Below are positions 29,842-63,100 of a stretch of 64,000 bases of DNA, piece by piece. Every line of letters starts with the position of its first letter. Within the stretch, counting starts at the first letter, position 1. The stretch covers positions 1-64,000 of the forward strand of contig MCFE01000022.1 of NCBI GenBank assembly GCA_002104905.1. Direction: 5' to 3'. The DNA comes from Basidiobolus meristosporus CBS 931.73 (lineage: Eukaryota; Fungi; Basidiobolomycota). The notes under the pieces are model-generated. The model searched no databases, was not told the DNA's origin, and worked only from the letters and a program-made list of their open reading frames with translations. Both the position numbers and the translations under genes were made by a program.

Positions 29842-31489
29842 GATAAACAAAAATAAAAGCGAATCTAAATGTGAGTTGAGGCAGTAACGACTACTCAGGG
29901 CTATATATAGGCTGTTTGTATGTGGGATAAACCCTCCAGATACTTTGGGGAACCTTAAGTGGTCGTCAAATCATGATTGCATTCGATATGTTACTCAATA
30001 GTATGAAGATCTTCTTGCCCAGATGCATGATGGACACTATTTGTAAATCCAATTCTACGATCAAAGTAGGGGTGCCCAGCTCGGTAGGGGGCAGAGGAGA
30101 TAGTGGGATGAGAGGTGTAAAGTGGAGTGAGGTGATAGTAGGTGGGGAGCACCTGGACTATACCCCACTCAACTAAGGCGACATCAGTGCGATATTCCTG
30201 GCTGTAGAACCAATTGTCACCAGGTGTAGAGCACGTCTCCCTAAACACTCCCGAAAAACGATATTAAATCTAATCGGGATCCGTATCCAGGTAATACTTG
30301 CATTGTGTGTAATCAAGGAAAGCCTCTCAATGCATACCAATCAAGCAGCCAGTCGGCGCAGTATACTACCTCGTGGTACAGTAACAGCACCATCAATGGG
30401 CAGCATTATTCCAGTCCCTCGGAATAGTAACGGCGAGTGAGAGCGGTTTCAATTGAGGTGATGCAATATCCCTTCCATCAATGTAGACATAAATTCGCCT
30501 GTTTAATCTGCCTGCATATGATTGGATCGACATGGCAATCAAAGCATCTACCACAATCATCAACCGCAGGAGTCTTCATGATCGCCCGCCGTTTAGGGTT
30601 AGGACTGGCGTGTCCAAAATACCGGTTTGGAAGCCAATCTTTGCGTTAGACAATCCTTGTTCGGCACATCATGCTTAAATAGAAGTCTACCTCTTATTCA
30701 TAGTACTGATAATCTCTGTATTTGCAATTCAATGTCACTCGTTTACCTTCCACTTGTACTCTGCTTAACTTACATACTCAGGGGTTGGCTGTAAGCAAGA
30801 ATATCAGAACACAACCAACCCAGTGCCACCATATATAGCAATGAACCAACCAGCACGCCCCAATTTTCTGTGAAGATACTGGAGCATTGATAGCATATAT
30901 TGTATGCTAAAATCATGAAATTCGAGGACCAATCACGAATACGAACATGCGTTAATAATTCCTCCCAAACCGTTTAAAAAAGGCGTTTCCAGTTCGAGCT
31001 TAGATGGGCAGTGCAATTGTTACATTGTGTGGTACCGGAGTGACAATACCTGTTAATAAATCAGCTTGATCTTTTTAAATTCGGCTTCCCACAGTTATTT
31101 ATCCCTCTAGGTCAGCTTCCACAATGATTCGGATGATACTTTTTGGCCATGGGTCATTGCTATATACTGGGTGGGTGTTGTAGGACAAGACCTTGGGGAG
31201 TTATTTTGGTAGGAATTCCGAGAGCTCGTTGCCTCTGTAACCTCAACAGTCCTTCGTTAGGGGGACCACAAGTGATGTCAAGCATCCAAACACACTGACT
31301 CAAACAGCATTAGGTTACACTTCAGCTTACTCACATGAAATTAACGAATATCAAGTTTATCAATATATCGTGGCTATTACACAAGTGATTAGTGGGTATC
31401 ATGCTTGCTATATGCTTGTTTGTTTAAGAATTGGCTAATGTACATTATCGGATCAATTGTTACAGGGTTACTATCACCAGGATCACAAA

Positions 31490-34084
31490 ACCGTCACTAA
31501 ACCATTGGGTTAGTTTGCTATGTCCATGGCCGATCAAAATGATGCACTCACCATGGTATATGTTCTTAAACCCTTTCTGGGGGATTTTTCTAATGGTGAG
31601 GTGGATTTGGATGTAGAGTGAGCGGAAGAGCCATTCTCGTAGACTTTCTGTTGGTTGGTTAGTCAAGCTCACCTGGCCATGCATGAAACCTTTGTTACCT
31701 GAGTCCCATCAACAAACTGGATCACCTTTCTCCCATGAATATCCACAGTTTGGATTGTTCCATCAGGAAAAATAGACTTTTCCTAGGTTGGTGGGGATTT
31801 TAGTAAGCCGGTACCGTGACATTCGTACGCGAGGGCACGTATCTACCTCGTTATTGGGATATATGTATTGTACTGTGGCGTCGGGGAACTTTACTTCGAT
31901 AGTACCATCAACATGGTGCTTTTCTAGTTGGCCGTTGGCAAATTGGAACATTTCCGTCTTGTCTGGCAAGCTAGTATGGATGGTTTTCGTTTCTGCATAG
32001 AAATATACGACTTTGCCATCCTCAAAGGTTTCTTTCGCGTCCCCGTTCACAAAGCGCAACTTGGTATAACCGCTTGAACGGTGCTCCTTTGTGGTTCCAT
32101 TGCGATATAGCACCAGCCGTGTACCATTTGCGTACATACGCTCACACTTCCCATCGGGGTAGCACACCTCTTCAAAAGGTTTCATTAATCTGAGCTCAGC
32201 ACCAAGCTCATCAAGCGGGCTGTTCTGGCCTTCATTCTTATCCGGCACCACTCGAGATGGTGACGGTGTTGAGGAATGACCCTGTGCACTTTCGGTAACA
32301 CAATTTTCGATACCTGAAGCTGTGTCACTTTCATCTGTGAATTGTCTTAGCTTTTTCCTTAATAAGCTGTTTTGTTTTGTCAGAAGTGCGACTGTATGCT
32401 CAAGCTCTTGGGCTGTCACATCTAGTTTGGGCTAAAGTTCTCATTTGGTAAGAGTCGGATAGATATGAGTTGGAATGAAGAGTCACCTTGCTTCGCTGGT
32501 CCATCAATTTGGCATTTAGGTCATTGATTATCTGCTGGAGCTCCTCATTTCTTCTCGTCAACGTCACTGCTCTATCTTTCAGCCGGCTGAGCTCCGAGCT
32601 AGACTTACTTTCTTTTTTTTTTAGTTTTGAGTTTAGTTCTTTCACTGTTTCTCGCAGCAATTCAATCTCCTGCCGCTCTCTAACGAATGTTGTTAGTCAC
32701 GTAGCAACAATCAAAGCCTCGAATAAAATTACTTCTTGTTCGCGGTGGTTGCAGTGACTAATTGATGCTTCTCCAGCGTCAGTTTTTCCCGTCGCTTGTT
32801 TACTTCCGTTTCATGATGCAGCCTCTTGAGCTTTGCAAGCTCCTCGGACTTGTATTTTTCAAACAATTCCTAAGCCACGAAAGTATCATAAGTACCTTAT
32901 CTAGTCAAAGTGTGAAGCATATACGGCGTTACTTTCTCGGCCTCTAGAGCCTTAACATTGCGTATATGATCGCGGCGCAATCTATCAATATCTATAGTCT
33001 TGATATCATCGTCCGAAGTTGTTATTTTGGTGCACATGATTCAAATGAGCATTGGCTGAAGACCTACTTCACGCTCCAAACTTCGATGAGGTTGAGTCGG
33101 GGATAATGAAGATTGTATGGGTACTGTGGATGCTCTATGTACAGGTGAACGAATTTGGGTTGGTTGTGGTAATTTCGATGCGACTAGATAAAACGGTTCC
33201 GCTCGGTTATATTCAGTTCCATCACATAGAGATTGCAGTACAAATAGCGGATACCTGTGGTTTTGCATGTCATCGAGACTCCAGTTGAATTTCCTCGAGT
33301 TGCCGCCCAGTTAGGAGAGAGTCGTAGATAACTATCTTGCGGTTCCATACCATCACTACTTGGAGTAGAGAATGTAGAATCTACCAAGGATTACTGTATT
33401 AGTCCTGAAAAATAAAAGAACATAAATTCCGTGACAGGAGGCGACTCATCTACCCAAAGTTGTGGAACACATCTTTTCCAACCCGTCAATATTAAATGAG
33501 CTTGGTCTTGAGATTTTTATAGGGTTATCAAACTCCTGAGTATAGTTAATAATAATCTTGACGTGGATCCAGAAGTCAATATACTTACTGAAGTAGTCTC
33601 CGAAGCACTATCAACATCCGAGTCAACATACGACCTGTTCAACACAAGTTCAGAAAGGTTCACCTGAGTACATGGCTGGGTATTACTCACTCGGTACGAA
33701 GCTTGGGCCATTTTGAAGGAGCTGGGCTAGGCCTTGGGGGTATGTTGGACACTTCCTCCTCGAGAGCCAGGAAGCCTTTGAGCGCCTCCTCCTCCCACTT
33801 TTTTTTGGAAGCCCATTTCTGGTGAATTTTCGAGCGTTCCTCTACAAGGAAGTCCTTTTTCGTTTTAAGAGCCTCTGATTCAGTGTAGAATTTCAAACTA
33901 GGGAATACTGAAGTATCGCTAGTCGAGCTTGCGAAGGAACTCTCCATAAGAGGATCGTTGGAAGAACTCTGTTGGACCTTTGGAGATTTCTGACGAGGTT
34001 TCCAGTAAGTAAATAGAAAAGAGGCAGTACAGTTTCCAATGCTACGTTAAATCAGGTGTTAAGATATACCTCTTGGTGGGCCAT
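31490..34084 (-). CDS. SAS4: SAS-4/CPAP (CENPJ) centriole assembly protein, multi-exon
   Basis: Tcp10_C/G-box repeats (YPDGKCERMYANGT, FVNGDAKET, YFYAETKTIHT, FANGQLEKH, EKSIFPDGT) at ~31700-32180. Spliced coiled coil REKLTLEKH...NKKERQEIELLRETVKELNSKLKKKESKSSSELSRLK parallels human CPAP KERKVFEKY...DKKEREEIQTLK...KETKWSSTHSRL. In-frame GT-AG introns traced from ATG 34084. The 3' end is approximate. Confidence 0.85.
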
Positions 34085-34528
34085 TGCTCCAGAATAAGAA
34101 GAATTATCGTGTTAGTCCATGAAGCAAGGAGTGAGCAATATCTAGTGGTGATTTGGTTTAATTTATGCATGCTTTGCTATTTAACCATATAGGTAGCCTA
34201 CTAAATCAGCTGTGTGCATTCACACTGAAGGAACGGACTCCTAATTAATTCATATGCATGGATTTAACAAGTTGCTCTTGGTTGTACGGAAATGGAGTCA
34301 ACTTCACGACCTGGCGATGTAGCCACGCCACAAAGAAATAACCCCAGCCTCTGATTATTTGTATACCCTTGTGCTTACACTCGTGCCACCACAGAGCTGA
34401 GTGACCAATATATCCTTGGTGCACGGCCAACGTAGAGAAAGGATGTTCCAAGACCAGATCTTGGATTGCCTGATCAAGCGTTTGCAATGGTACAATGAAT
34501 GGCATTTATTAAATTTTTAAGTAGCTTG

Positions 34529-37500
34529 CTATTCATCCGAGCTCTGGTCCTTTTCCTCGGAAATATCCGCCGTCAACTCATTCTCGTCTAATGAATCCCC
34601 ATGCGAGCCCTTCATATGATAGACTAGCAAGGATTCGATCAGCTCAGTGTTGAATCCCAGCTCCCAATGCTCAATTTGATTCAAGATTGTTGCACTCAAT
34701 GAGCAACCATGCTCCTCCTCTTCAGGGGCCTCCTCCTCTTCTAGGGACTCGAGGAATTTCTGGAGGATGATTCGTTTGGCCGACAGACCACGTCTAACTT
34801 CTGTGTGGACTCTCTTATATCTGAATACCAGATGAGCAGCCAGGTTTTCGCGGCCCAGGTCATGGATACGCTTGATGGTGGAGTGGATCAATTTTTTCCG
34901 TAACTCGGACAACTTCTTCTCGGTCCCTTTAGGGCCATTGCCTGCGTTGAACTGGAACAACGAGTCGAAGATTGGTTGAGAAATATGGGTATCAAGCATC
35001 TGCTCGAATATTCCGGTGATCACCATCTCCACATGGAGCACTCTGTCATTCAGCAGTGCGTCTGACAATAGCGGGTCTTTCTCGGCTTCGTCCTTTACCT
35101 CCAATAATTCACGGATCTCTTGCTCCACTATGTCGTGTGTTTCCTTTGCGTTCGATAGTAGACTATGGTGGTAGTAGCTTATGGTACGTTGATTGGCAGA
35201 TAGGATTTGCAATAGCTCGCTTTCATACTATAGGGATTACGAGTCATTCTGAGAAGCTATCTCATGAATCAACGCAATCTCAATAAACTTACCTTCAGGC
35301 ATACATCGTTTGCGGCGGGCAGAGCCAAGCGAATTAGTAGCACCCACTCAGCATATTGATTACTTATCATCCATTTGAACACATCGAACCAGCTCTCGAC
35401 CAAGTACTCGGGCAAGGCCGTTGAGCGGTCAGCATCGGCAAGTTGGCTTAGCGTCCAGCCCCGAAGCATTTTTACCAGTGATTGGTAATGGTTTAACCCA
35501 TCTGATTGCCCAAGAAGCTTTTTAAATAACTCATGCCTGCTAGAGTCGCTCACCAGGTCGTTTTGGGTCAGCGTGTAGTTCCATGTGTCCTTCAATAGCA
35601 GCTCTAGCCTAAAGAACCCGATCTCTTGGCCAATCTCTACCTGCCCAGTAAACTCCTAAGAGGGATCAAATTAATGAGCTACTTCGCGTTTGCGTACAGG
35701 TATGTAATACTAACTTCCAGGATTTTCTCCTTCTTTCTGACGTGTATCAACTCCGAGAAGTGCCTGATATTCTCCAAAAGACCGGGTGGTAAGCTTTTCC
35801 CTTCATCAAGCGCGTCAATGGATGTGGTGAGTTTCATGATATCGTCCGGGGTGTACTTGTGGTAAGGAGGGAAATTGGTGGATTCCACTGGGTTCGACAA
35901 ATAAGGAAGCAAATAAAGTAGATAATAGTAGCAAGCAACCAGCTCGTTATGCGATGTGGAGTCAAGAGAATCAAAGAGCTCACGAGCTTCAGAGGGGTTC
36001 TTCAAAGCCAAGAGATAGCATATGGAAAGAGGGGTCTGTCCTTTGAAGCTTCCTTGGGCCAGATCCAACAATATGGGATCCAACTCGGAATTACCCTCAC
36101 CTGAAGACTTATCGTTGAATAGCTTCATGCATGACAATCGATATATCATCTCTAGCACTGCTCCCTTTGCATTGTGGATTGAATTCTCAGACAGAGTGTA
36201 TGGAGAGGACTTGGATGCAGAATATGATGCAACAGGACTCCAGTAGAATTCGTGGTGATCGTTGGTCGACTCTGTTGACGGTGACTCGTCAGGAATTAGG
36301 TGATGAAGCTCGGTGATCGCCTGGTCCAAGTCCAATTCTGATTCATTGGACATGCCTTGCATTTTCAGGGAGTTTTCCTGCACTTGCTCCTTAAGTAGAG
36401 AAAGATCCTGGTGGGTCTTTAGTTTTCTCCAGAGTTGAATAACTATGTAGATATCTTCCTTGGGGCAGACAGTAGAAGCAAAGCTCAGGAGCTGGAGACG
36501 ACGCCTGAGACCAACCGAGTTAGGAATGTTAGCAAGATCGTAACAAACCCTCCAAGCCATGTCTCTGGCTTCCAACATTCCAGCCGGCGCTACTTGTCGA
36601 ATCTTTTTCCCCAAACCCATCAACTTCTCGCACATGCCATATGCCGACTTGTAATCCCTGCGCTTCACTGCTGCTCTTGAAAGCAACGCATAGATCTTGA
36701 CCTCGGCTGATGGGTCATCTCTGTAGCCAAGTTTGTGTCCCAGCTCCATGATTCTGCCAGGCGCTTTGTAAGCTTTGGGATGATCATCAAGAACACGTGC
36801 AATCAACTCTAATCGATTCGGCGCTAATCTGATCTGAATTGGGAGCATTGGGATGTTTGGTTTGTGCTGCAGATTGTATTCGGCAAGAACGTGGGTGGCC
36901 TCAATCAGATCCAGCTCTTCCCTCAATGCTGCGGAACTTGGAAGCACCTTCAAACTGCTCAAAGTCAACAAAAGTGGTAAATGGATTAGAGGTCAGAACT
37001 ACAAACCAATCGTATGCCATCTTCATGAATCCCCCATCCATACTTCCAGATTCAGCATTGTCGAAAAACTCTCTCGAAGCATTAATAACCAACTCTTCGG
37101 CGGCTGGGGCCGAGAGTGGCGGCGCCTTCTCTTTTGGTAAAAGCAATTCTCTCGCCAAACGGAACCCTATCGTCAAATGCAGACAAGGTCGGTGTCACCT
37201 AGCGCTCGATACAGTGGGGAGCAGATCAACTTACCTCCACAACTCAGCAGTCCCGACAAGAATTCCTTGTATATTTCCTCGGTTGCGATTTCTCCCAAAA
37301 CGCCATTGTTGTGCAAGTCTATCATAGCTTCGAGCAAGAAGGTCCACTCGTCTTCGTTCTCGAATTTGCTTCCCATGGTATCAACCCCACCGCTGGCATG
37401 CCTGGCGATTCTGAGCAGCAACTGCTTTTGAACGGGATAGCTGCCCTCGCTATCCAGGTACCAACCTAGCATTACAGGGATGTCATATCGCTCGAGAATA

Positions 37501-40500
37501 TCGGCGGCGTTTAGGTGTACTTCCAGCTTATTGATGACAAGCTGAATATCAGTCTCATCCATCTCCTTCAGCAAGTTGAAATATTCATGAGACGATAGCT
37601 CCGTGAACTTGCCACCATTCGGGACAGCTAGCGGCTTGGCTTTCGTAATGTCGATCTCGAAATCTGGAAGGCATTCGAAAATCTGGCTCATCAGTCTCCA
37701 TTGGTCTGTGCTCCTGGATCCATACAGGCAAGCCAGTGCAAGCTGGCTTAGCAGGAGGTCCTCTGCGATGATTCTGTCTTGTGCTGGGAGCGTTGGCTTG
37801 GACTCGTTGAAAATCAAGTAACACCAATCCAGGTGCTTGGTAGAGAGCGTCAAAATGAAGTCGTACAGGAGACTCATTGAATCGCGTCCGCCCTGAGTCA
37901 CCTTCGCCGACTGGTTTCTCAAGTAGGGTATCACGAAGTTTCTGATATCTCTCACTATTCTCTGCTCATTGGTTTCGCGTAAAATCAGCTCCACAACCTC
38001 CTTCACGGTGAGCCTTTCAAACGATTCTAGCGTTATTTCCAAGCATGCTTCGGGGGAGTCGGAGTAGCATTCGTAAACTAGCTGTGAAACGGTACGAAGG
38101 TTGTCCCTAAGCTCTTCAAGCCCCTGGACTCCATTGGCGTCGCCGATCTGGATCAACCGATAGGCATGATGAATCTGCCCCGAGACCACATCAATGTTGT
38201 GAGCACGCGAAATATACCATTCACTAATGGTGGCGCCTGAAGCGGGGTATTGCACCTTGTCCTTGGGGTGAGATATATCTTGTGTGCTTAGCTCTTCAAG
38301 CGAAATGCCCAGCTGGGCCAGCAATAAAGGATTCTCGACCGGATCTTGCTCGCGCCACGCTTTCTCGGGCCACAGGCTCTCCTCATTCACCTCACTATTC
38401 ACTTTAGGTAGGAAGTCCTGGTAAGAAGAAGGATCGGCAATTTCGGGGATTTGGTCAAGGATTGCAAAGCGGTACGGCAGGAGCGCAGAACCATGTCTGG
38501 TAAATAGGATTTTCAAGGGCGAATATTTCTCAATCACCGCATATTGAAGAGCTTGCTCAATAATATTCACCTCTCGGAAGTAAATGAAGTCCTCGGCAAA
38601 AGAGCTCTCTTCTGCATGCTGCTTTTCGTCGGCATCATTGCTGGGGCTCTGGGTCGTATCTTGGTTCGTTGCTGATTCCTCGATTGCATCCATTATTTCG
38701 ACCATCGTGTTTAACCGATCCAGATATTTCAAAAAGGCAACTCTATATCTACAGTGCATCGCCTGTTCTTGTGTGAGTTGACTGAAGTTGTTGTCCAGTT
38801 TGCCTAGTGCCTCTACTACGTGATTCGTCTCTTTCAGCCCGTATTCAAGCAGGAGCTTGGCTGCTTCGGTATTCCCAGGAATCCTCATCAAACACGTCTC
38901 AATGACCCAATTACGGTCTTTTATGTTGTCCAGGTACTTGTGAAGACTTTCTTCGGTTACTTCGGCCCCGTTCCATTGAGCTTGGTATACAACATCCGAA
39001 TTCAGATTGTATAGTTTTGCGATCGATAGCGCGTTTTCATATTCGAATGCTAGGACCTTTCTTTCCAATAAGTTTATGGGCATGATCTCCGCAAATTGAA
39101 CTAGCCTCAAGCATCTTCTTGGAATAGTTACGTACTTCCCCTTGGCCGACTTCGAATCTCCTTCGAAATTCCACAGGAACGTGTTGGTAATATAATACAA
39201 AGAGCTTCCGACAAACGAGAACAGATGCTTGAAGAACGGCTGGTTCGTCTCTAATTCGTCTTCGTAGTCTACTTCTTCGTCCTGTGAAGAATGGATAAAC
39301 GTGAGCTTATTGTCCCGGTGCAGACGCGCACGAAGCATCAATGTCTCATGCTCAAGCAAGTAGAATCGATTGTCCAAAGGCTTGGAAATCTCCAGGTTGG
39401 ATTTCAAGTACTCGGGCGACTCCCCCAACATATTCAAGCGACTGGAGACTTTGAAAATCAGCATAGCCCCATGCTCGTAGCCAAGGACAATCGAATCAAC
39501 ATCCCACCACTGGGCGGAGACAACGTTGCCACTCTCCAGGCTGGGGTTGTTCTCAGACTCTCTCTTCAGCCGTTCCTGGAACTCCGAGAAAGTGAGATCT
39601 TTGTAGGCCTCAGGCTTAGCAAAGAACGACAACTCATCCCGCTTCCAATGATGGACCAAGTCAACGTTGGAGTCTTTTTCGATACGCCACACCTTCAAAG
39701 TACCCAGGAAATCGAGGGAGAGCAGGTAGTTACCATCTGGTGAAATTGTGATACAACGCACCACCTCATCGATGAAGCTCTTCTTTCTCTTGCCTAAGGT
39801 CGTGATGATATTGCGCAACTTGGTCACCACTCCGGTTTCCTCCAGCTCGCCCTGCATTTTCTTGCTGGAGCTGTTTTCTGCAGGCTCCTCAATGACATCT
39901 GCATCAAACAACTGGTAGAATGGAGAGGTGAGAGTCATTTTCCATCCCGACATCGATGGAAAACGCTTAGCACTTTCTGGGGACTGGTTAGAGCTCACGT
40001 CGGCAGGATCCTTCAATGCACCCTTGCCAGCGACATACAACATATTGGTTGTCGGGTTGATGGCTGCACTGACTACCGTTTCGTAGTGGGAGCTGAAAGC
40101 ATACTTGTGGTGCGGGGTAAAGATCCCCGAATCTAAGACACCTTCTTTGGGATAGGAAGTTCCGAGATTCTTCCGATAATTCAACGGGATTTGCGTCTTC
40201 TCGGGGAGGTTATCCTCCGAGAAATAATTGAAGAGGTAGCTTCGTAAAATACCATCGTAAGTAATGCTTATTAGCTGATAGCGATACTCTGCTCCCTCGA
40301 AATGGATGGCATCTTGTTTCCAGAATGTTGAATCCAGCAGCACTAGCTGTGCGACGGGTTCAATAAAGAATTGGTTTCCCTCAACGTCCTCAGCGGCCTT
40401 GCTGTCACCTGTTTCGGTCGATAGAGTGCCTGGTACTTGCCCAGAAGGCCGCGTATTGGCCTGTATTGAGAAGATTGGCTGGCCATTTCTATCTACAACT

Positions 40501-40991
40501 TCGATAGAGCCGTCACTTCGAGATAGTGCTAACAAAAGAGAGTCGGGGCTCCAGGTGATGCATCTCCATTTCGAAAACGGGTCACGTTTGGTGGAGTAGA
40601 CTGCATGGATAGTACTGAAATTCGGTGCGTTTAAGTGCTGGTTTTCGTTTACAAACCCCTTCAAAAAGCGGATTTCCAGCTTGCTCTCTTGGTAAATCGC
40701 AAGCTGTTGTGCGTTTGGGGAGGTGCATAATTGCCAATCATTTTTCAGCTTGGCCAACTCTTGTATCAGTACCGGGGGGACGGTGGTGGAAATGACCAAG
40801 CCGTCGAAGGTACGTGCCAGATGTGACGTAAGATATTGAAACCACCCTTGAGAGTAGGCGGGGCCGTTTAGATAATTCGAACTACCTGGCTCCCCAGCCT
40901 CATCGCCTTCCTCAGGATCCCACTCGGCTACAACAGTAAGATCATAAAGTAGTTTGTGCTTGTTGCTTACGAAATCTTCAGATTTTTCCAT
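34529..40991 (-). CDS. NBAS: NBAS/Sec39 ER tethering (NRZ/Dsl1) subunit with N-terminal beta-propeller
   Basis: N-terminal WQLCTSPNAQQLAIYQESKLEIR...DPFSKWRCITWSPDSLLLA and Sec39-like EYENALSIAKLYNLNSDVVYQAQW. Long exons 40991-~37235, ~37180-35690, ~35620-35290 and ~35230-34529. Confidence 0.88.
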
Positions 40992-60170: not shown

Positions 60171-63100
60171 TTATTGTACATATTTACGGAGCGCAAAGCA
60201 AAGGGTGCTGATGGATTGAAAGCCTTGAGGGGAGGTCTTTCGAACGATATCCCGCACTGTCGAGTCCCTAGAAAGATCACCACAGATTAGCATGTTAATT
60301 GAAAATCGAATCGAATACAATGGTGTTACATACTTGAATGCTCCGTACACAGGCTCAAAGTTCCAATCCAGACTGCCCAGGTTATTAAGATCAACATTCA
60401 TCTTGAGGAAAAATTTGGTTTTGGAGTCGGGCCCAAAGAATAATGCGCTAACGTCAAAGTGTCCCTGTTGATCCATAGAGAGATCCAAAGGAAGCTTGTA
60501 TCGAATGGCAACCACGTCTCTTTCGAAGGCTTTGAAAGAATGATAGCGAGAGGCAATGATGCTTGCGACCTCACTGAAAGTGGGGGCTACGGAGGAGCCT
60601 TCGTATGCCTTCTGAATCTGGAAGCGGATCCATGCGAGGCAGAGCTCGTTTAAATCACCGTGGGCACTCGTCTCGTTTGACACAAAAGCCAAGTCTATAG
60701 CCTCCCAGCGCTTGGTTGGCAGCAACTCGACGTTCACGGAGACCTGAAGGGCGCCATCATATATGAAGGTGTTGTTCTGTGCAGATACGTGAACCGGCTT
60801 CCAACAAAGCAATGCTTCCAACAGACTGTGCTCCTCTTGAATCGAGACAAGATCCTCTTCGGAGCAGAACTTCAGATCCTCAAATGCGGATTTGGCTTGC
60901 TCAATAGCCTCAACCAAGTTCCCCTTTTGATTCTCCAACTCGCGAAGTTTCGCTAGGAGTTTTTCCTCTTCACTTGCAATCTCGCTTTGCTCTTTTCGGA
61001 AGATATCCAATTGCGTGTTCTGCTCGGCAATCGCCTCACGAAGGTTCTCCAATTGCTCCAGCTGGTCTTTAAGCTCTGATTGCTGCAACTCCTCTTCATG
61101 CTGCACTTTCTTGGTCAGAGAATCGGAGTATGCTTGAATCTTGGTAAGCATACCCTGGACCTGCTCTTTGAATTGAGCCACTTGCTTGGAATCGGTCTTT
61201 AAACTCTCCAAAGTCTCCTTGAGCTTGGTGATGACTGGGCTGAGTAGCTTTTCACGCCAGTTATACCACATATACTTGGTTGTGAGGTCAGAATGTTGTT
61301 TCAACACATTGAATTGGCCAGCAATTTCCCCACGAATCTCTTCTGAGCTCTCGTAGTACTCCTTCATCAAGGCCGAAGGCTCCGCGTTCAGCTCTCCCTC
61401 GATGATTTGAACAGCAGAAGCACCTTGCATGATGTTTTGCTTAAGCTCCTGACAGCAGAACTCCAGTAGCTGCAACTCTGAGAAAAGTACGGCACTTGTC
61501 TGGACATAATCAACTGTTGAAGGAGCCTTATCGTCGATCTCGAGAGGGGTGCCATCCTCTTCAGGAAGCTTGTGGTCTCTGAAGGACACCTCGATCAATC
61601 GAAGGAAACCCTCCACGTCGGTTGGCGTTGGCTTTTTGCTTTGCTCGTCGTAAGAAAACTCGGTTTCAGGAAGCTCTTGGTGTAAGATGTTTTCCTCAGT
61701 GTCATAGAATTGTGCACTACACATAGAATCATCCATGTTCACCTCAAACTGCTTCTCATCAAGGCCAACGCTCACGGTGGGTGGGGTGGGGGTCTTTTGG
61801 GCACGGAGAGCTGGTGATGCGTCCTGCTCGCCACCCTGCTTGGCAAGCGAACTAGGAGTCTTTACCTTGGCAAGTGAAGTGGGTGTTTCAATGGTTGAAT
61901 CAGGAGATCTCCTGTCTTGAGTGCTAGACAAGCGACGTTCCTGGGCAGTCGGTGTTGAGATGTCCATGGATATGTTGGAGCTATCGATATCATCGGGTGA
62001 TTTTGCATCCTCAAATTGCTGCGCCAGGTTTGCTCGCGAAGAGGCAGCTTCGGGTGTGGCGGGCCATCCCTTAGGACTAGCCGAAATGGGCGTGCTAGAA
62101 TCGATTTGATTCACAATCCCGCCCAAGCATTGCGTGAATTCCATTGGGATGGATTCGGTTTGGTCATCGTTGAGCTCTTTTCTGGGTTCTTCGGGTTTGT
62201 CCAGCACTTCATTTTGAATTCCCCCTACGCATTGAGTTAACTCCATGGGGAGTGACTCAGTTTGATCTTGCATCGATTGATCCAGAATAGTATCAGTTAC
62301 ATCAAAAGCAGCTTTACGTGGGGTGGACATGGAGGCTGATGGTGTCTCAGCTCCGGTGCTGATGCACTCGGTGATTTCCATGGTCATTTCTTCCGATGAC
62401 TCATCTAGATCTGGTGCTCCTTGCTGCTCAACAATTCCGCCAAGGCATTTGGTCTCATCCATAGGAAGAGACTCGGTAACATCCTCATTCCCGGATGGAA
62501 GAACGGTGTTTGATTTGCTGGGGGTGCCGTTGAATGGAATCTCTACAGTGTTGCCAGCCAGATCCATAGGCACACTTTCGGTTTCATCATCATCTAGCAA
62601 GCAGAATTAGCGCACAGGGACAAACGTGGGAGGGGATCTTCATAAGCTTACTTGGCTCGTCTGTGCGATCAAACATATCAAATGCCTTTTTCTGGGTTTC
62701 CTGTGAGTCTGACTTTCGCTCGCCTCCATATCCCCCGAATCCTCCAAACCCAACATCATGTACCAGAGGACGACTAGGGATACCCCAAGATACTGAAGAA
62801 GGAAAGTGGGTAATAGGATTGCTCAGTGCACTCTTTTTGGACTCTGATGAACTGATGTCGGCTTCTTCTTCAGCTACAGTACTCTTTATAGGGGTGTTGT
62901 TGCTGTTGGCTAATTCTTCGGGAGCTTGATAAAAAGGTTAGGAATTACCAACGCAGACCATTCATTGCGAAAGTACCTTGCTCGGCGGTGAAGCTTTCAC
63001 TCAAATCCATATCTGAGGTCTCTGGCTCAAATGCTGGATCCTCATTTTCTTTGTTTTCAGCGTCGTCACTAGAAGATGGTTCCTCTTGGGCTTCGGTGGA

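What the first reader, a model, noticed from the sequence alone, without database searches (positions are those of the whole stretch)
31490..34084. Compact SAS-4/CPAP centriole gene in what appears to be a terrestrial fungus
Seen: a spliced gene with the CPAP coiled coil and Tcp10_C G-box. It is roughly half the length of human CPAP, and the last G-box repeats are replaced by a Ser/Thr/Lys tail (KVYENGSSAHSTSKSTSPLEKSPRK). Known: SAS-4 is a core centriole protein, absent from Dikarya, whose G-box binds STIL/Ana2. Basidiobolus lacks flagella but has a centriole-like nucleus-associated organelle with a ring of singlet microtubules. Inference: if the host is non-flagellated, this gene may build a remnant centriole of altered symmetry.
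Basis: partly seen in the sequence, partly recalled or inferred. Interest (0 to 1): 0.72.

Follow-up and report, generated by a model that had tools for sequence, protein, structure and literature searches.

The report
Centriole gene SAS-4 in tail-less Basidiobolus
A fungus that has no swimming cells and no normal centrioles (Basidiobolus meristosporus) keeps an expressed, well-conserved copy of the core centriole-building gene SAS-4/CPAP with a shortened end domain, which gives a direct way to test whether the odd microtubule-bearing body beside its nucleus is a leftover centriole.

Summary
The window is the first 64 kb of contig MCFE01000022.1 of Basidiobolus meristosporus CBS 931.73, 100% identical over 22.5 kb. 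Minus-strand gene K493DRAFT_404217 is a genuine SAS-4/CPAP/CENPJ orthologue. Pfam Tcp10_C scores E 2.7e-23 and zebrafish CPAP G-box crystals score E 6.5e-32. An AlphaFold model (pLDDT 92.5) superposes on them at 1.2-1.9 Å.

- **STIL surface:** all eight zebrafish residues that contact STIL are kept.
- **Expression:** spliced cDNA contigs confirm 10 of 11 internal introns. They show the public 485-aa model is wrong; the product is 596 aa, or 615 aa from the upstream ATG.
- **Selection:** the syntenic B. ranarum orthologue has saturated synonymous sites but few replacements (G-box 82% identical).
- **G-box end:** A conserved Ser/Thr/Pro/Lys tail replaces it. Zoosporic fungi and animals keep the full domain.
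- **Not special:** the compact size is normal for fungal SAS-4.
- **Not found:** no tubulin-binding PN2-3 motif, in Basidiobolus or in chytrids.

A role in a remnant centriole is plausible but untested. This scan had not reported this gene before. It has reported STIL-like, Plk4, CEP120 and CCDC77 genes elsewhere in the same genome. I found no paper on any of this.

The parts
31411..34083 (-). Transcribed span of the SAS-4/CPAP gene (K493DRAFT_404217) as covered by cDNA contigs
   Evidence: Run X3 contigs cover 31411-31496 at the 3' end and reach 34083 at the 5' end. They carry canonical GT..AG joints on the minus strand.
33691..33947 (-). Exon with the favoured start codon (ATG 33947-33945). 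It encodes the N-terminal block conserved with B. ranarum.
   Evidence: The ORF is. The cDNA contig reads through 33990-34069 and ends at 34083, so 33947 is the first ATG of that transcript. The block is 70% identical to B. ranarum. The JGI model also starts here.
34070..34084 (-).
   Evidence: It parallels the 15-nt first exon of the B. ranarum annotation. B. ranarum has Ile at the position of Met 33947. The X3 cDNA contig does not splice this intron.
33589..33634 (-). Exon 2
   Evidence: Joints 33634|33691 and 33535|33589 in cDNA. Same 46-nt size in B. ranarum.
33454..33535 (-). Exon 3 (Ser/Thr-rich region, skipped in the public 485-aa model)
   Evidence: cDNA joints 33535|33589 and 33380|33454. 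Model.
33255..33380 (-). Exon 4 (Ser/Thr-rich region, skipped in the public model)
   Evidence: cDNA joints 33380|33454 and 33183|33255.
33068..33183 (-). Exon 5 (Pro/Ser-rich region, skipped in the public model)
   Evidence: cDNA joints 33183|33255 and 32998|33068. Same 116-nt size in B. ranarum.
32933..32998 (-). Exon 6, start of the long helix (coiled coil)
   Evidence: cDNA joints 32998|33068 and 32869|32933. AF2 helix.
32733..32869 (-). Exon 7 (coiled coil)
   Evidence: cDNA joint 32869|32933. Same 137-nt size in B. ranarum. The intron after it (32680-32732) is not confirmed: one X3 contig reads through it.
32487..32679 (-). Exon 8 (coiled coil, with the ERQEIELL...LTRRNEELQ block shared with chytrid SAS-4)
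   Evidence: cDNA joint 32431|32487. Same 193-nt size in B. ranarum. BLASTP against Spizellomyces.
31847..32431 (-). Exon 9: end of the coiled coil, a variable linker, and the first ~12 strands of the G-box including all STIL-contact residues
   Evidence: Tcp10_C E 2.7e-23. Zebrafish CPAP E 6.5e-32 with F978, Y994, Y996, H1003, F1015, Q1019 and E1021 identical and T1005 changed to Ser. 100% identical to P0001 residues 234-428.
31699..31782 (-). Exon 10: three more G-box strands
   Evidence: cDNA joints 31782|31847 and 31647|31699. Alignment. AF2 strands.
31552..31647 (-). Exon 11: last G-box strand (KVYE), then the conserved Ser/Thr/Pro/Lys tail ending ...SPRKGLRTYTM
   Evidence: cDNA joint 31496|31552. 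21 of the last 23 residues are identical in B. ranarum. The tail is disordered in AF2, pLDDT 48-57.
31494..31496 (-). Stop codon TGA, the first three bases of the last exon (the rest is 3' UTR)
   Evidence: The cDNA joint skips 31497-31551. B. ranarum has the same stop-only last coding exon.

Best explanation
This is the Basidiobolus meristosporus orthologue of the core centriole-assembly protein SAS-4/CPAP/CENPJ. It was inherited vertically from the flagellated fungal ancestor and is kept in working order in a fungus with no flagellum.

**Shown here:**
- The gene is intact, spliced and transcribed.
- It evolves under strong purifying selection.
- It encodes an N-terminal conserved block, a Ser/Thr/Pro-rich stretch, a long (~160-residue) helical coiled-coil region, a linker and a G-box beta-meander.
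- The STIL/Ana2-binding edge of the G-box is fully conserved.
- The G-box stops about three crystal strands (about 46 residues) early. It ends in a short disordered tail that is conserved between species and carries a full CDK-type site ([ST]-P-R-K).

**Inferred.** The protein most likely still works as in animals and chytrids. It would dimerise through the coiled coil and be recruited by the genome's STIL-like protein under Plk4 control. It would then help assemble or stabilise the ring of microtubules in the nucleus-associated organelle, making that organelle a remodelled centriole.

Loss of the last strands removes the beta17 edge used for the head-to-tail G-box contacts seen in zebrafish crystals. 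Any vertical 'ruler' fibril should therefore be altered or absent, and the tail may put this end under cell-cycle phosphorylation control.

I put identity as SAS-4 at about 0.97 and the centriole-remnant function at about 0.5.
For: **Identity.**
- Pfam Tcp10_C and a PDB sequence match to CPAP/Sas-4 TCP domains.
- AF2 model with pLDDT 92.5 and 16 strands. The top 11 Foldseek hits are all CPAP/Sas-4 G-box crystals at rmsd 1.2-1.9 Å.
- The G-box tree puts Basidiobolus inside a clade whose named members are all zoosporic fungi.

**Organism.** 100% identity over 22,465 bp to GCA_002104905.1 MCFE01000022.1.

**Function retained.**
- Spliced cDNA contigs.
- A syntenic orthologue in B. ranarum with the same 13-exon layout.
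- pN 0.19 against saturated pS 0.84 overall, and pN 0.095 in the G-box.
- A third lineage, about 88% identical, also holds the gene (run X4).
- All eight STIL-contact residues defined in PMC3776556 are kept.

**Context.**
- Earlier scan notes report STIL-like, Plk4, CEP120 and CCDC77 genes in this genome. I did not check these.
Against: - There is no localisation, interaction or loss-of-function data.
- I could not fetch the STIL-like, Plk4 or any SAS-6, CEP135 or delta/epsilon-tubulin gene of this genome, so the partner set rests on unchecked notes.
- No PN2-3 tubulin-binding motif (PF25779, FLKRGEG-type SAC) is detectable. The microtubule-building activity of CPAP may therefore be absent, although the motif is equally undetectable in centriole-bearing chytrids.
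- The truncated G-box lacks a region whose mutation impairs centrosome localisation in flies (the MC3 cluster, PMC3776556).
- One cDNA contig retains intron 32680-32732, which would give a truncated product.
- Taxonomic descriptions state that Basidiobolus mitotic organelles are 'not centrioles' (PMC6492006).
Confidence: 0.55

Rival explanations
1. The gene is a true SAS-4 orthologue that has been re-used for a job unrelated to any centriole-like structure. Examples would be tethering pericentriolar-type material (gamma-tubulin, pericentrin or Cdk5rap2 homologues) at the spindle pole, or another scaffold role. Under this reading the nucleus-associated organelle is not centriole-derived.
For: The PN2-3 tubulin-binding module is not detectable and the end of the G-box is lost. 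Both fit a change of function. PCM components are conserved throughout fungi whereas centriole proteins are generally not (PMC6070874). Purifying selection shows function but not which function.
Against: The STIL-binding edge is fully conserved, which is hard to explain without a STIL-like partner. Earlier notes report STIL-like, Plk4 and CEP120 genes in the same genome. That is a module with no known role outside centriole assembly.
Confidence: 0.3
2. The gene is a decaying relic of the flagellated ancestor (or a transcribed pseudogene) with no remaining function.
For: The host has no flagellum. The G-box is truncated. One cDNA contig retains an intron that introduces a stop.
Against: The reading frame is intact across 12 coding exons. 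Ten introns are precisely spliced in cDNA. Replacement differences are far below saturated synonymous differences against B. ranarum, with the G-box 82% identical and 21 of the 23 tail-end residues identical. Exon structure and synteny are conserved.
Confidence: 0.03
3. The gene came by horizontal transfer from an animal host or gut protist, or is assembly contamination, rather than by descent within fungi.
For: Basidiobolus lives in animal guts. The G-box is about as similar to animals (44-45% to zebrafish) as to chytrids (41-48%). Deep nodes of the G-box tree are weakly supported (0.57-0.60).
Against: The gene sits in a 235-kb fungal contig between NBAS/Sec39 and a C2H2 zinc-finger gene, with the same neighbours in B. 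ranarum. It has short fungal-type introns. It groups with zoosporic fungi. The SAC motif that nearly all animal CPAPs carry is absent here, as in chytrids. DNA runs cover it at the same depth as its flanks.
Confidence: 0.04

Closest known systems
CPAP/CENPJ of vertebrates (zebrafish G-box/TCP crystal structures 4BXP, 4BXR, 4LD1; human CPAP, 1338 aa)
   Same: - C-terminal single-layer beta-meander G-box, 44-45% identical, rmsd 1.2-1.9 Å to the AF2 model.
- All eight STIL-contact residues kept, including the microcephaly glutamate (human E1235, zebrafish E1021).
- A long coiled coil precedes the domain.
   Different: - Less than half the length.
- No detectable PN2-3 (LID/SAC) tubulin-binding motif and no A5N region.
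- The G-box ends near zebrafish residue ~1079, so beta15-beta17 and the conserved GRVRxKDxxGxVI end are missing.
- A conserved disordered Ser/Thr/Pro/Lys tail stands in their place.
SAS-4 of zoosporic fungi (Spizellomyces punctatus SPPG_02988, 763 aa; Rhizophlyctis, Synchytrium, Blastocladiella, Paraphysoderma, Neocallimastix)
   Same: Closest relatives in the G-box tree. Similar size. Collinear coiled coil, linker and G-box (33% identity over 445 aa to Spizellomyces). The animal-type SAC motif is likewise not detectable.
   Different: Those organisms have flagella and canonical centrioles. Those aligned here (Spizellomyces, Rhizophlyctis, Paraphysoderma) keep the full-length G-box. Spizellomyces keeps a weak LID-like motif at its N-terminus, which Basidiobolus lacks.
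Coemansia reversa spindle pole body with a centriole-like ring of nine microtubules (McLaughlin et al. 2015, as discussed in PMC6070874)
   Same: A non-flagellated zygomycete with a microtubule-containing cylinder at the spindle pole, discussed as a possible degenerate centriole.
   Different: No orthologues of SAS-6, CPAP or CEP135 were found in the Coemansia genome (PMC6070874). Basidiobolus does keep SAS-4.

Membership tests
SAS-4/CPAP/CENPJ | C-terminal G-box (TCP) domain, Pfam PF07202 Tcp10_C repeats | tested here: met
   Exon ORF E 2.7e-23, 81.7 bits against a cut-off of 36. P0001 E 4.5e-34 with 3 stretches.
SAS-4/CPAP/CENPJ | G-box fold: one elongated, solvent-exposed antiparallel beta-sheet | tested here: met
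   AF2 pLDDT 92.5 with 16 consecutive strands. The 11 best Foldseek hits are all CPAP/Sas-4 TCP crystals, rmsd 1.2-1.9 Å. This rests on a predicted model, not an experimental structure.
SAS-4/CPAP/CENPJ | Conserved STIL/Ana2 proline-motif binding edge (zebrafish F978, Y994, Y996, H1003, T1005, F1015, Q1019, E1021) | tested here: met
   Seven residues are identical and T1005 is Ser in the phmmer alignment. The residue list comes from PMC3776556. Binding itself was not tested.
SAS-4/CPAP/CENPJ | Full-length G-box (17 crystal strands plus the conserved C-terminal GRVRxKD...VI stretch; beta1/beta17 head-to-tail contact) | tested here: not met
   Both Basidiobolus species lack the last ~46 residues that chytrids and animals keep. 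cDNA confirms the stop. Strand count and the beta1/beta17 contact come from PMC3824074.
SAS-4/CPAP/CENPJ | Dimerising coiled coil N-terminal to the G-box | tested here: met
   AF2 gives helices of 128 and 32 residues at pLDDT ~96. The region aligns with the coiled coil of Spizellomyces SAS-4. Dimerisation was not tested.
SAS-4/CPAP/CENPJ | PN2-3 tubulin-binding region (Pfam PF25779; LID helix and FLKRGEG-type SAC motif) | tested here: inconclusive
   Not found in P0001 or P0156 by Pfam at E ≤ 0.1, by motif or by an HMM built from 83 homologues. It is equally absent from centriole-bearing chytrids, so the test may lack reach in fungi.
SAS-4/CPAP/CENPJ | Orthology: groups with SAS-4 of related taxa, at a conserved locus | tested here: met
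   The fungal clade has only zoosporic fungi as named members. Deep support is weak at 0.57-0.60. Synteny and exon layout are shared with B. ranarum.
SAS-4/CPAP/CENPJ | Localises to and is required for assembly of centrioles | not testable with these tools
   This needs microscopy and genetics in Basidiobolus.
Mammalian TCP10/TCP10L (short G-box-like paralogues) | Short mammal-specific protein with only the Tcp10_C-like end, without the SAS-4 coiled-coil architecture | tested here: not met
   The Basidiobolus protein is collinear with fungal SAS-4 over 445 aa including the coiled coil, and it groups with fungal SAS-4.

The most novel reading that the evidence does not exclude
Basidiobolus keeps a working Plk4 / STIL-like / SAS-4 / CEP120 assembly module with no cilium to serve. 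The module builds the ring of singlet microtubules in its nucleus-associated organelle. That organelle would then be a living intermediate between the centriole and the fungal spindle pole body. The clade-specific shortening of the SAS-4 G-box, with its phosphorylatable tail, would be part of how the lattice was remodelled away from the canonical 9x3 form.
Probability: 0.3. Interest if true: 0.85.

Novelty: new variant of a known kind. Interest (0 to 1): 0.62.

Why it matters
Reviews and surveys state that centriole-assembly proteins are absent from all fungi except the flagellated chytrids. They also state that centriole and flagellum were lost together, once, on the way to land (PMC6070874, PMC6559791, PMC1599754).

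Basidiobolus has long been known to have a centriole-like body with an aberrant microtubule pattern, but no molecular link to centrioles has been published in the library I could search.

An expressed, constrained SAS-4 with an intact STIL-binding surface turns 'is this organelle a remnant centriole?' into a direct experiment: localise the protein, test partner binding, or disrupt the gene in a culturable fungus. The naturally truncated G-box is also a ready-made test of the proposed head-to-tail 'molecular ruler' role of that domain.

Tried and rejected
- **Sequencing runs.** The look-up of sequencing runs listed no RNA run. Run X3, labelled 'DNA?', turned out to hold spliced contigs and served as cDNA evidence.
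- **Word-index protein searches.** With P0001 and with the G-box region of P0156 they returned only five hits each. They say little about other fungi.
- **Exhaustive HMMER search.** Only the best 150 of 1725 hits are shown. A divergent SAS-4 in other non-flagellated fungi cannot be excluded. Among 30 hits looked up by name, the only non-flagellated fungi were the two Basidiobolus species.
- **PN2-3 searches** were negative.
- **dN/dS ratio** could not be computed because synonymous sites are saturated. I report pN against pS instead.
- **Partner genes.** I could not obtain the Basidiobolus STIL-like, Plk4, SAS-6, CEP135 or delta/epsilon-tubulin sequences by reference. No complex prediction was run and the rest of the toolkit was not checked.
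- **Joined model.** The joined spliced model was not sent to any search or folding tool. Searches used exon references and the public models P0001 and P0156 as proxies. The joined model was assembled only inside local scripts for translation, length and the pairwise comparison with B. ranarum.
- **Rejected readings:** pseudogene, animal-derived transfer or contamination, and a TCP10-like paralogue (see rivals).
Full report
**Where the window comes from**

The exhaustive protein search with the G-box exon returned P0001 as best hit. The cluster look-up names it ORY05736.1, hypothetical protein K493DRAFT_404217 of Basidiobolus meristosporus CBS 931.73. UniRef calls it a 'Centromere protein J C-terminal domain-containing protein'. 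Its encoding contig is GCA_002104905.1 MCFE01000022.1, positions 21483-43947. That stretch is 100% identical over all 22,465 bases to window 21483-43947. The window is therefore the first 64 kb of that contig.

Earlier notes of this scan had named the same organism, and I confirmed it independently. Basidiobolus is a non-flagellated zygomycete. [quoted passage not shown] Its mitotic organelles are described as 'incorporating microtubules (but not centrioles)' (PMC6492006).

**Gene structure**

I read the exons by hand and by script. I then checked them in two ways.

*Comparison with B. ranarum.* The orthologue P0156 (K7432_003051, 630 aa) lies in a syntenic locus: PP1-type phosphatase, NBAS/Sec39, Tcp10_C gene, C2H2 zinc finger (compare). 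Mapping its protein back onto its DNA gives 13 coding exons. These include a 15-nt first exon and a last coding exon that is only the stop codon. Seven of its exon sizes match my model: 15, 46, 116, 137, 193, 84 and 96 nt.

*cDNA evidence.* Laying public runs on the gene showed that the contigs of run X3 are spliced. Ten joints with CT..AC ends on the plus strand (GT..AG on the minus strand) coincide exactly with my introns:
- 33635-33690
- 33536-33588
- 33381-33453
- 33184-33254
- 32999-33067
- 32870-32932
- 32432-32486
- 31783-31846
- 31648-31698
- 31497-51

The last of these runs from 31497 to 31551. The gene is therefore transcribed and spliced.

Two points stay open:
- **Intron 32680-32732.** It has the same position and size class in B. 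ranarum, but one X3 contig reads through it, and no spliced contig across it was listed.
- **The candidate first intron 33990-34069.** The cDNA contig reads through it and ends at 34083. That favours Met 33947 and a 596-aa product.

The public 485-aa model skips the exons between 33535 and 33068 and uses a different, unsupported 3' end.

**What the protein is**

*G-box.* The large exon scores Pfam Tcp10_C at E 2.7e-23. It matches the crystallised G-box/TCP domains of zebrafish CPAP (E 6.5e-32) and Drosophila Sas-4. An AlphaFold2 model of P0001:305-481, built with a 61-sequence alignment, has mean pLDDT 92.5. It shows 16 consecutive short strands followed by a disordered tail. Its 11 best Foldseek matches in the PDB are all CPAP/Sas-4 G-box structures, at rmsd 1.2-1.9 Å and 44-45% identity to zebrafish.

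*Coiled coil.* Upstream, AlphaFold2 predicts a 128-residue helix and a 32-residue helix. This region and the G-box align collinearly with Spizellomyces SAS-4 (33% identity over 445 aa, E 2e-62).

*Phylogeny.* In a FastTree of the G-box of all retrieved homologues, the two Basidiobolus proteins fall in an 18-tip clade. Its named members are all zoosporic fungi: Spizellomyces, Rhizophlyctis, Borealophlyctis, Synchytrium, Polyrhizophydium, Entophlyctis, Lobulomyces, Neocallimastix, Blastocladiella and Paraphysoderma. Support for the clade is weak (0.57). Together with synteny, fungal-type introns and even DNA read depth, this argues for vertical inheritance rather than transfer or contamination.

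**Is it functional?**

Against B. ranarum, synonymous sites are saturated (pS 0.84) while replacement differences are few (pN 0.19 overall). Constraint varies by region:

| Region | Identity | pN |
|---|---|---|
| N-terminal block | 70% | 0.163 |
| G-box | 82% | 0.095 |
| Linker | 30% | 0.466 |
| Last 23 residues of the tail | 21 of 23 | not computed separately |

A third lineage, about 88% identical at the DNA level, also carries the gene on a 21-kb contig (run X4).

The zebrafish residues that contact the STIL proline motif are F978, Y994, Y996, H1003, T1005, F1015, Q1019 and E1021 (PMC3776556). I mapped them through the alignment. The E1021V crystal entry fixes the numbering. Seven are identical in Basidiobolus and T1005 is Ser. 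The glutamate mutated in human microcephaly (E1235) is kept.

**What is different**

*The end of the G-box is missing.* In the C-terminal alignment, both Basidiobolus proteins follow the family consensus up to ...IQFVDGT(Q/K)KVYE. They then switch to a Ser/Thr/Pro/Lys tail ending (K/R)(S/T)PRKGLRTYTM. Chytrids, Paraphysoderma, unnamed relatives and animals continue for about 46 more residues, ending in the conserved GRVRxKDxxGxVI stretch.

The zebrafish domain has 17 strands (residues 950-1106). In crystals it forms head-to-tail contacts between beta1 and beta17 with an ~8 nm repeat, proposed as a vertical 'molecular ruler' (PMC3824074). By my mapping the Basidiobolus sheet stops near zebrafish residue ~1079, so it lacks beta15-beta17 and the rest. 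The STIL interface covers the N-terminal half of the sheet (PMC3824074) and is untouched.

The tail keeps a full CDK-type consensus. It reads SPRK here and TPRK in B. ranarum, a change that keeps the phospho-acceptor. That it is a regulatory site is my inference.

*No PN2-3 tubulin-binding region is detectable.* Pfam PF25779 hits an animal CPAP and one unnamed homologue, but neither Basidiobolus nor the chytrids. Most retrieved homologues carry the FL[KR][KR]GxG SAC motif; Basidiobolus and Spizellomyces do not. A profile built from 83 homologues scores nothing in Basidiobolus and only a weak LID-like match in Spizellomyces. Centriole-bearing chytrids fail the same test, so I treat this as inconclusive.

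*The 'compact' size is not unusual.* Named fungal SAS-4 proteins are 467-944 aa, with Neocallimastix at 1615 aa.

**Interpretation**

The identity of the gene is secure. Its role is inferred.

The most economical reading is that SAS-4 still works with a STIL-like partner. Earlier notes of this scan report STIL-like, Plk4, CEP120 and CCDC77 genes on other pieces of this genome. I could not fetch those sequences, so I did not test them.

A Plk4-STIL-SAS-4-CEP120 set has no known function outside centriole assembly. That makes the microtubule-bearing nucleus-associated organelle the obvious candidate site of action.

The main rival is re-use of SAS-4 as a scaffold unrelated to a centriole remnant. 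Pseudogene, transfer and contamination readings are poorly supported.

Whether SAS-6 is present here is unknown to me.

**Novelty**

[quoted passage not shown] None were found even in Coemansia, which has a centriole-like ring (PMC6070874; PMC6559791).

I searched the full text for:
- Basidiobolus with centriole or centrosome terms;
- Zoopagomycota with centriole terms;
- zygomycetes with SAS-6;
- the gene's accession numbers.

None of these searches found a paper reporting SAS-4 in Basidiobolus.

The protein does carry an automatic UniProt name pointing to CENPJ, so the bare domain hit is public. What is new here:
- the corrected, cDNA-backed gene model;
- evidence of expression and constraint;
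- the conserved STIL surface;
- the clade-specific G-box truncation with a conserved tail.

**Method note**

Exon references and the public proteins P0001 and P0156 were used instead. The joined model was built only inside local scripts.

Noticed in passing
window 31411-34083 (run X3): Run X3 is listed as 'DNA?' with no RNA on record, but its contigs carry ten exact GT..AG splice joints. It is effectively a transcriptome assembly of this strain, with 0-1 differences from the window.
   Followed up: yes
window 31483-33947, public model K493DRAFT_404217 / ORY05736.1: The deposited 485-aa gene model skips the cDNA-supported exons between 33535 and 33068. It also ends in ...SPRK-VTVL through a GTTTAA donor that the cDNA does not use. 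The cDNA-backed product is 596 aa and ends ...RTYTM.
   Followed up: yes
window 32680-32732: One X3 contig (32487-32738) reads through this 53-nt intron, which would put a TAA stop right after exon 7. This could be intron retention or unspliced pre-mRNA. No spliced contig across it was listed.
   Followed up: partly
window 32293-32383: X3 shows a low-support joint (side 29, depth 12.8) that skips 89 bases, with GT..AG ends on the plus strand, inside exon 9. It could be an antisense transcript or an assembly artefact.
   Followed up: no
window 34529-40991, minus strand: The NBAS/Sec39 gene just upstream appears under-annotated. The public model is 852 aa, while B. ranarum has a 2110-aa product (L002 2634-9295). 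The window ORFs 37173-40991 (Nbas_N, WD40, Sec39), 35679-36971 (Sec39 end) and probably 34529-35595 look like one gene that ends only ~450 bp before the SAS-4 transcript start.
   Followed up: partly
window 60171-62600, minus strand: An 809-aa ORF with Spc7/KNL1 kinetochore and Knl1 RWD C-terminal domains (E 2.6e-33 and 2.8e-11).
   Followed up: no
window 31427-34195 (run X4): A 21-kb contig from a run with the same species label is only ~88% identical. It replaces 33481-33684 and 32995-33062 with unrelated letters of similar length. It is a diverged Basidiobolus lineage, or a second haplotype or homeologue, that also carries the gene.
   Followed up: partly
P0161 (Synchytrium microbalum), P0124, P0147: A few other homologues also seem to end early within the G-box, with 7-22 residues after the EExxFPDG strand. 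These may be truncated gene models rather than real variants.
   Followed up: no
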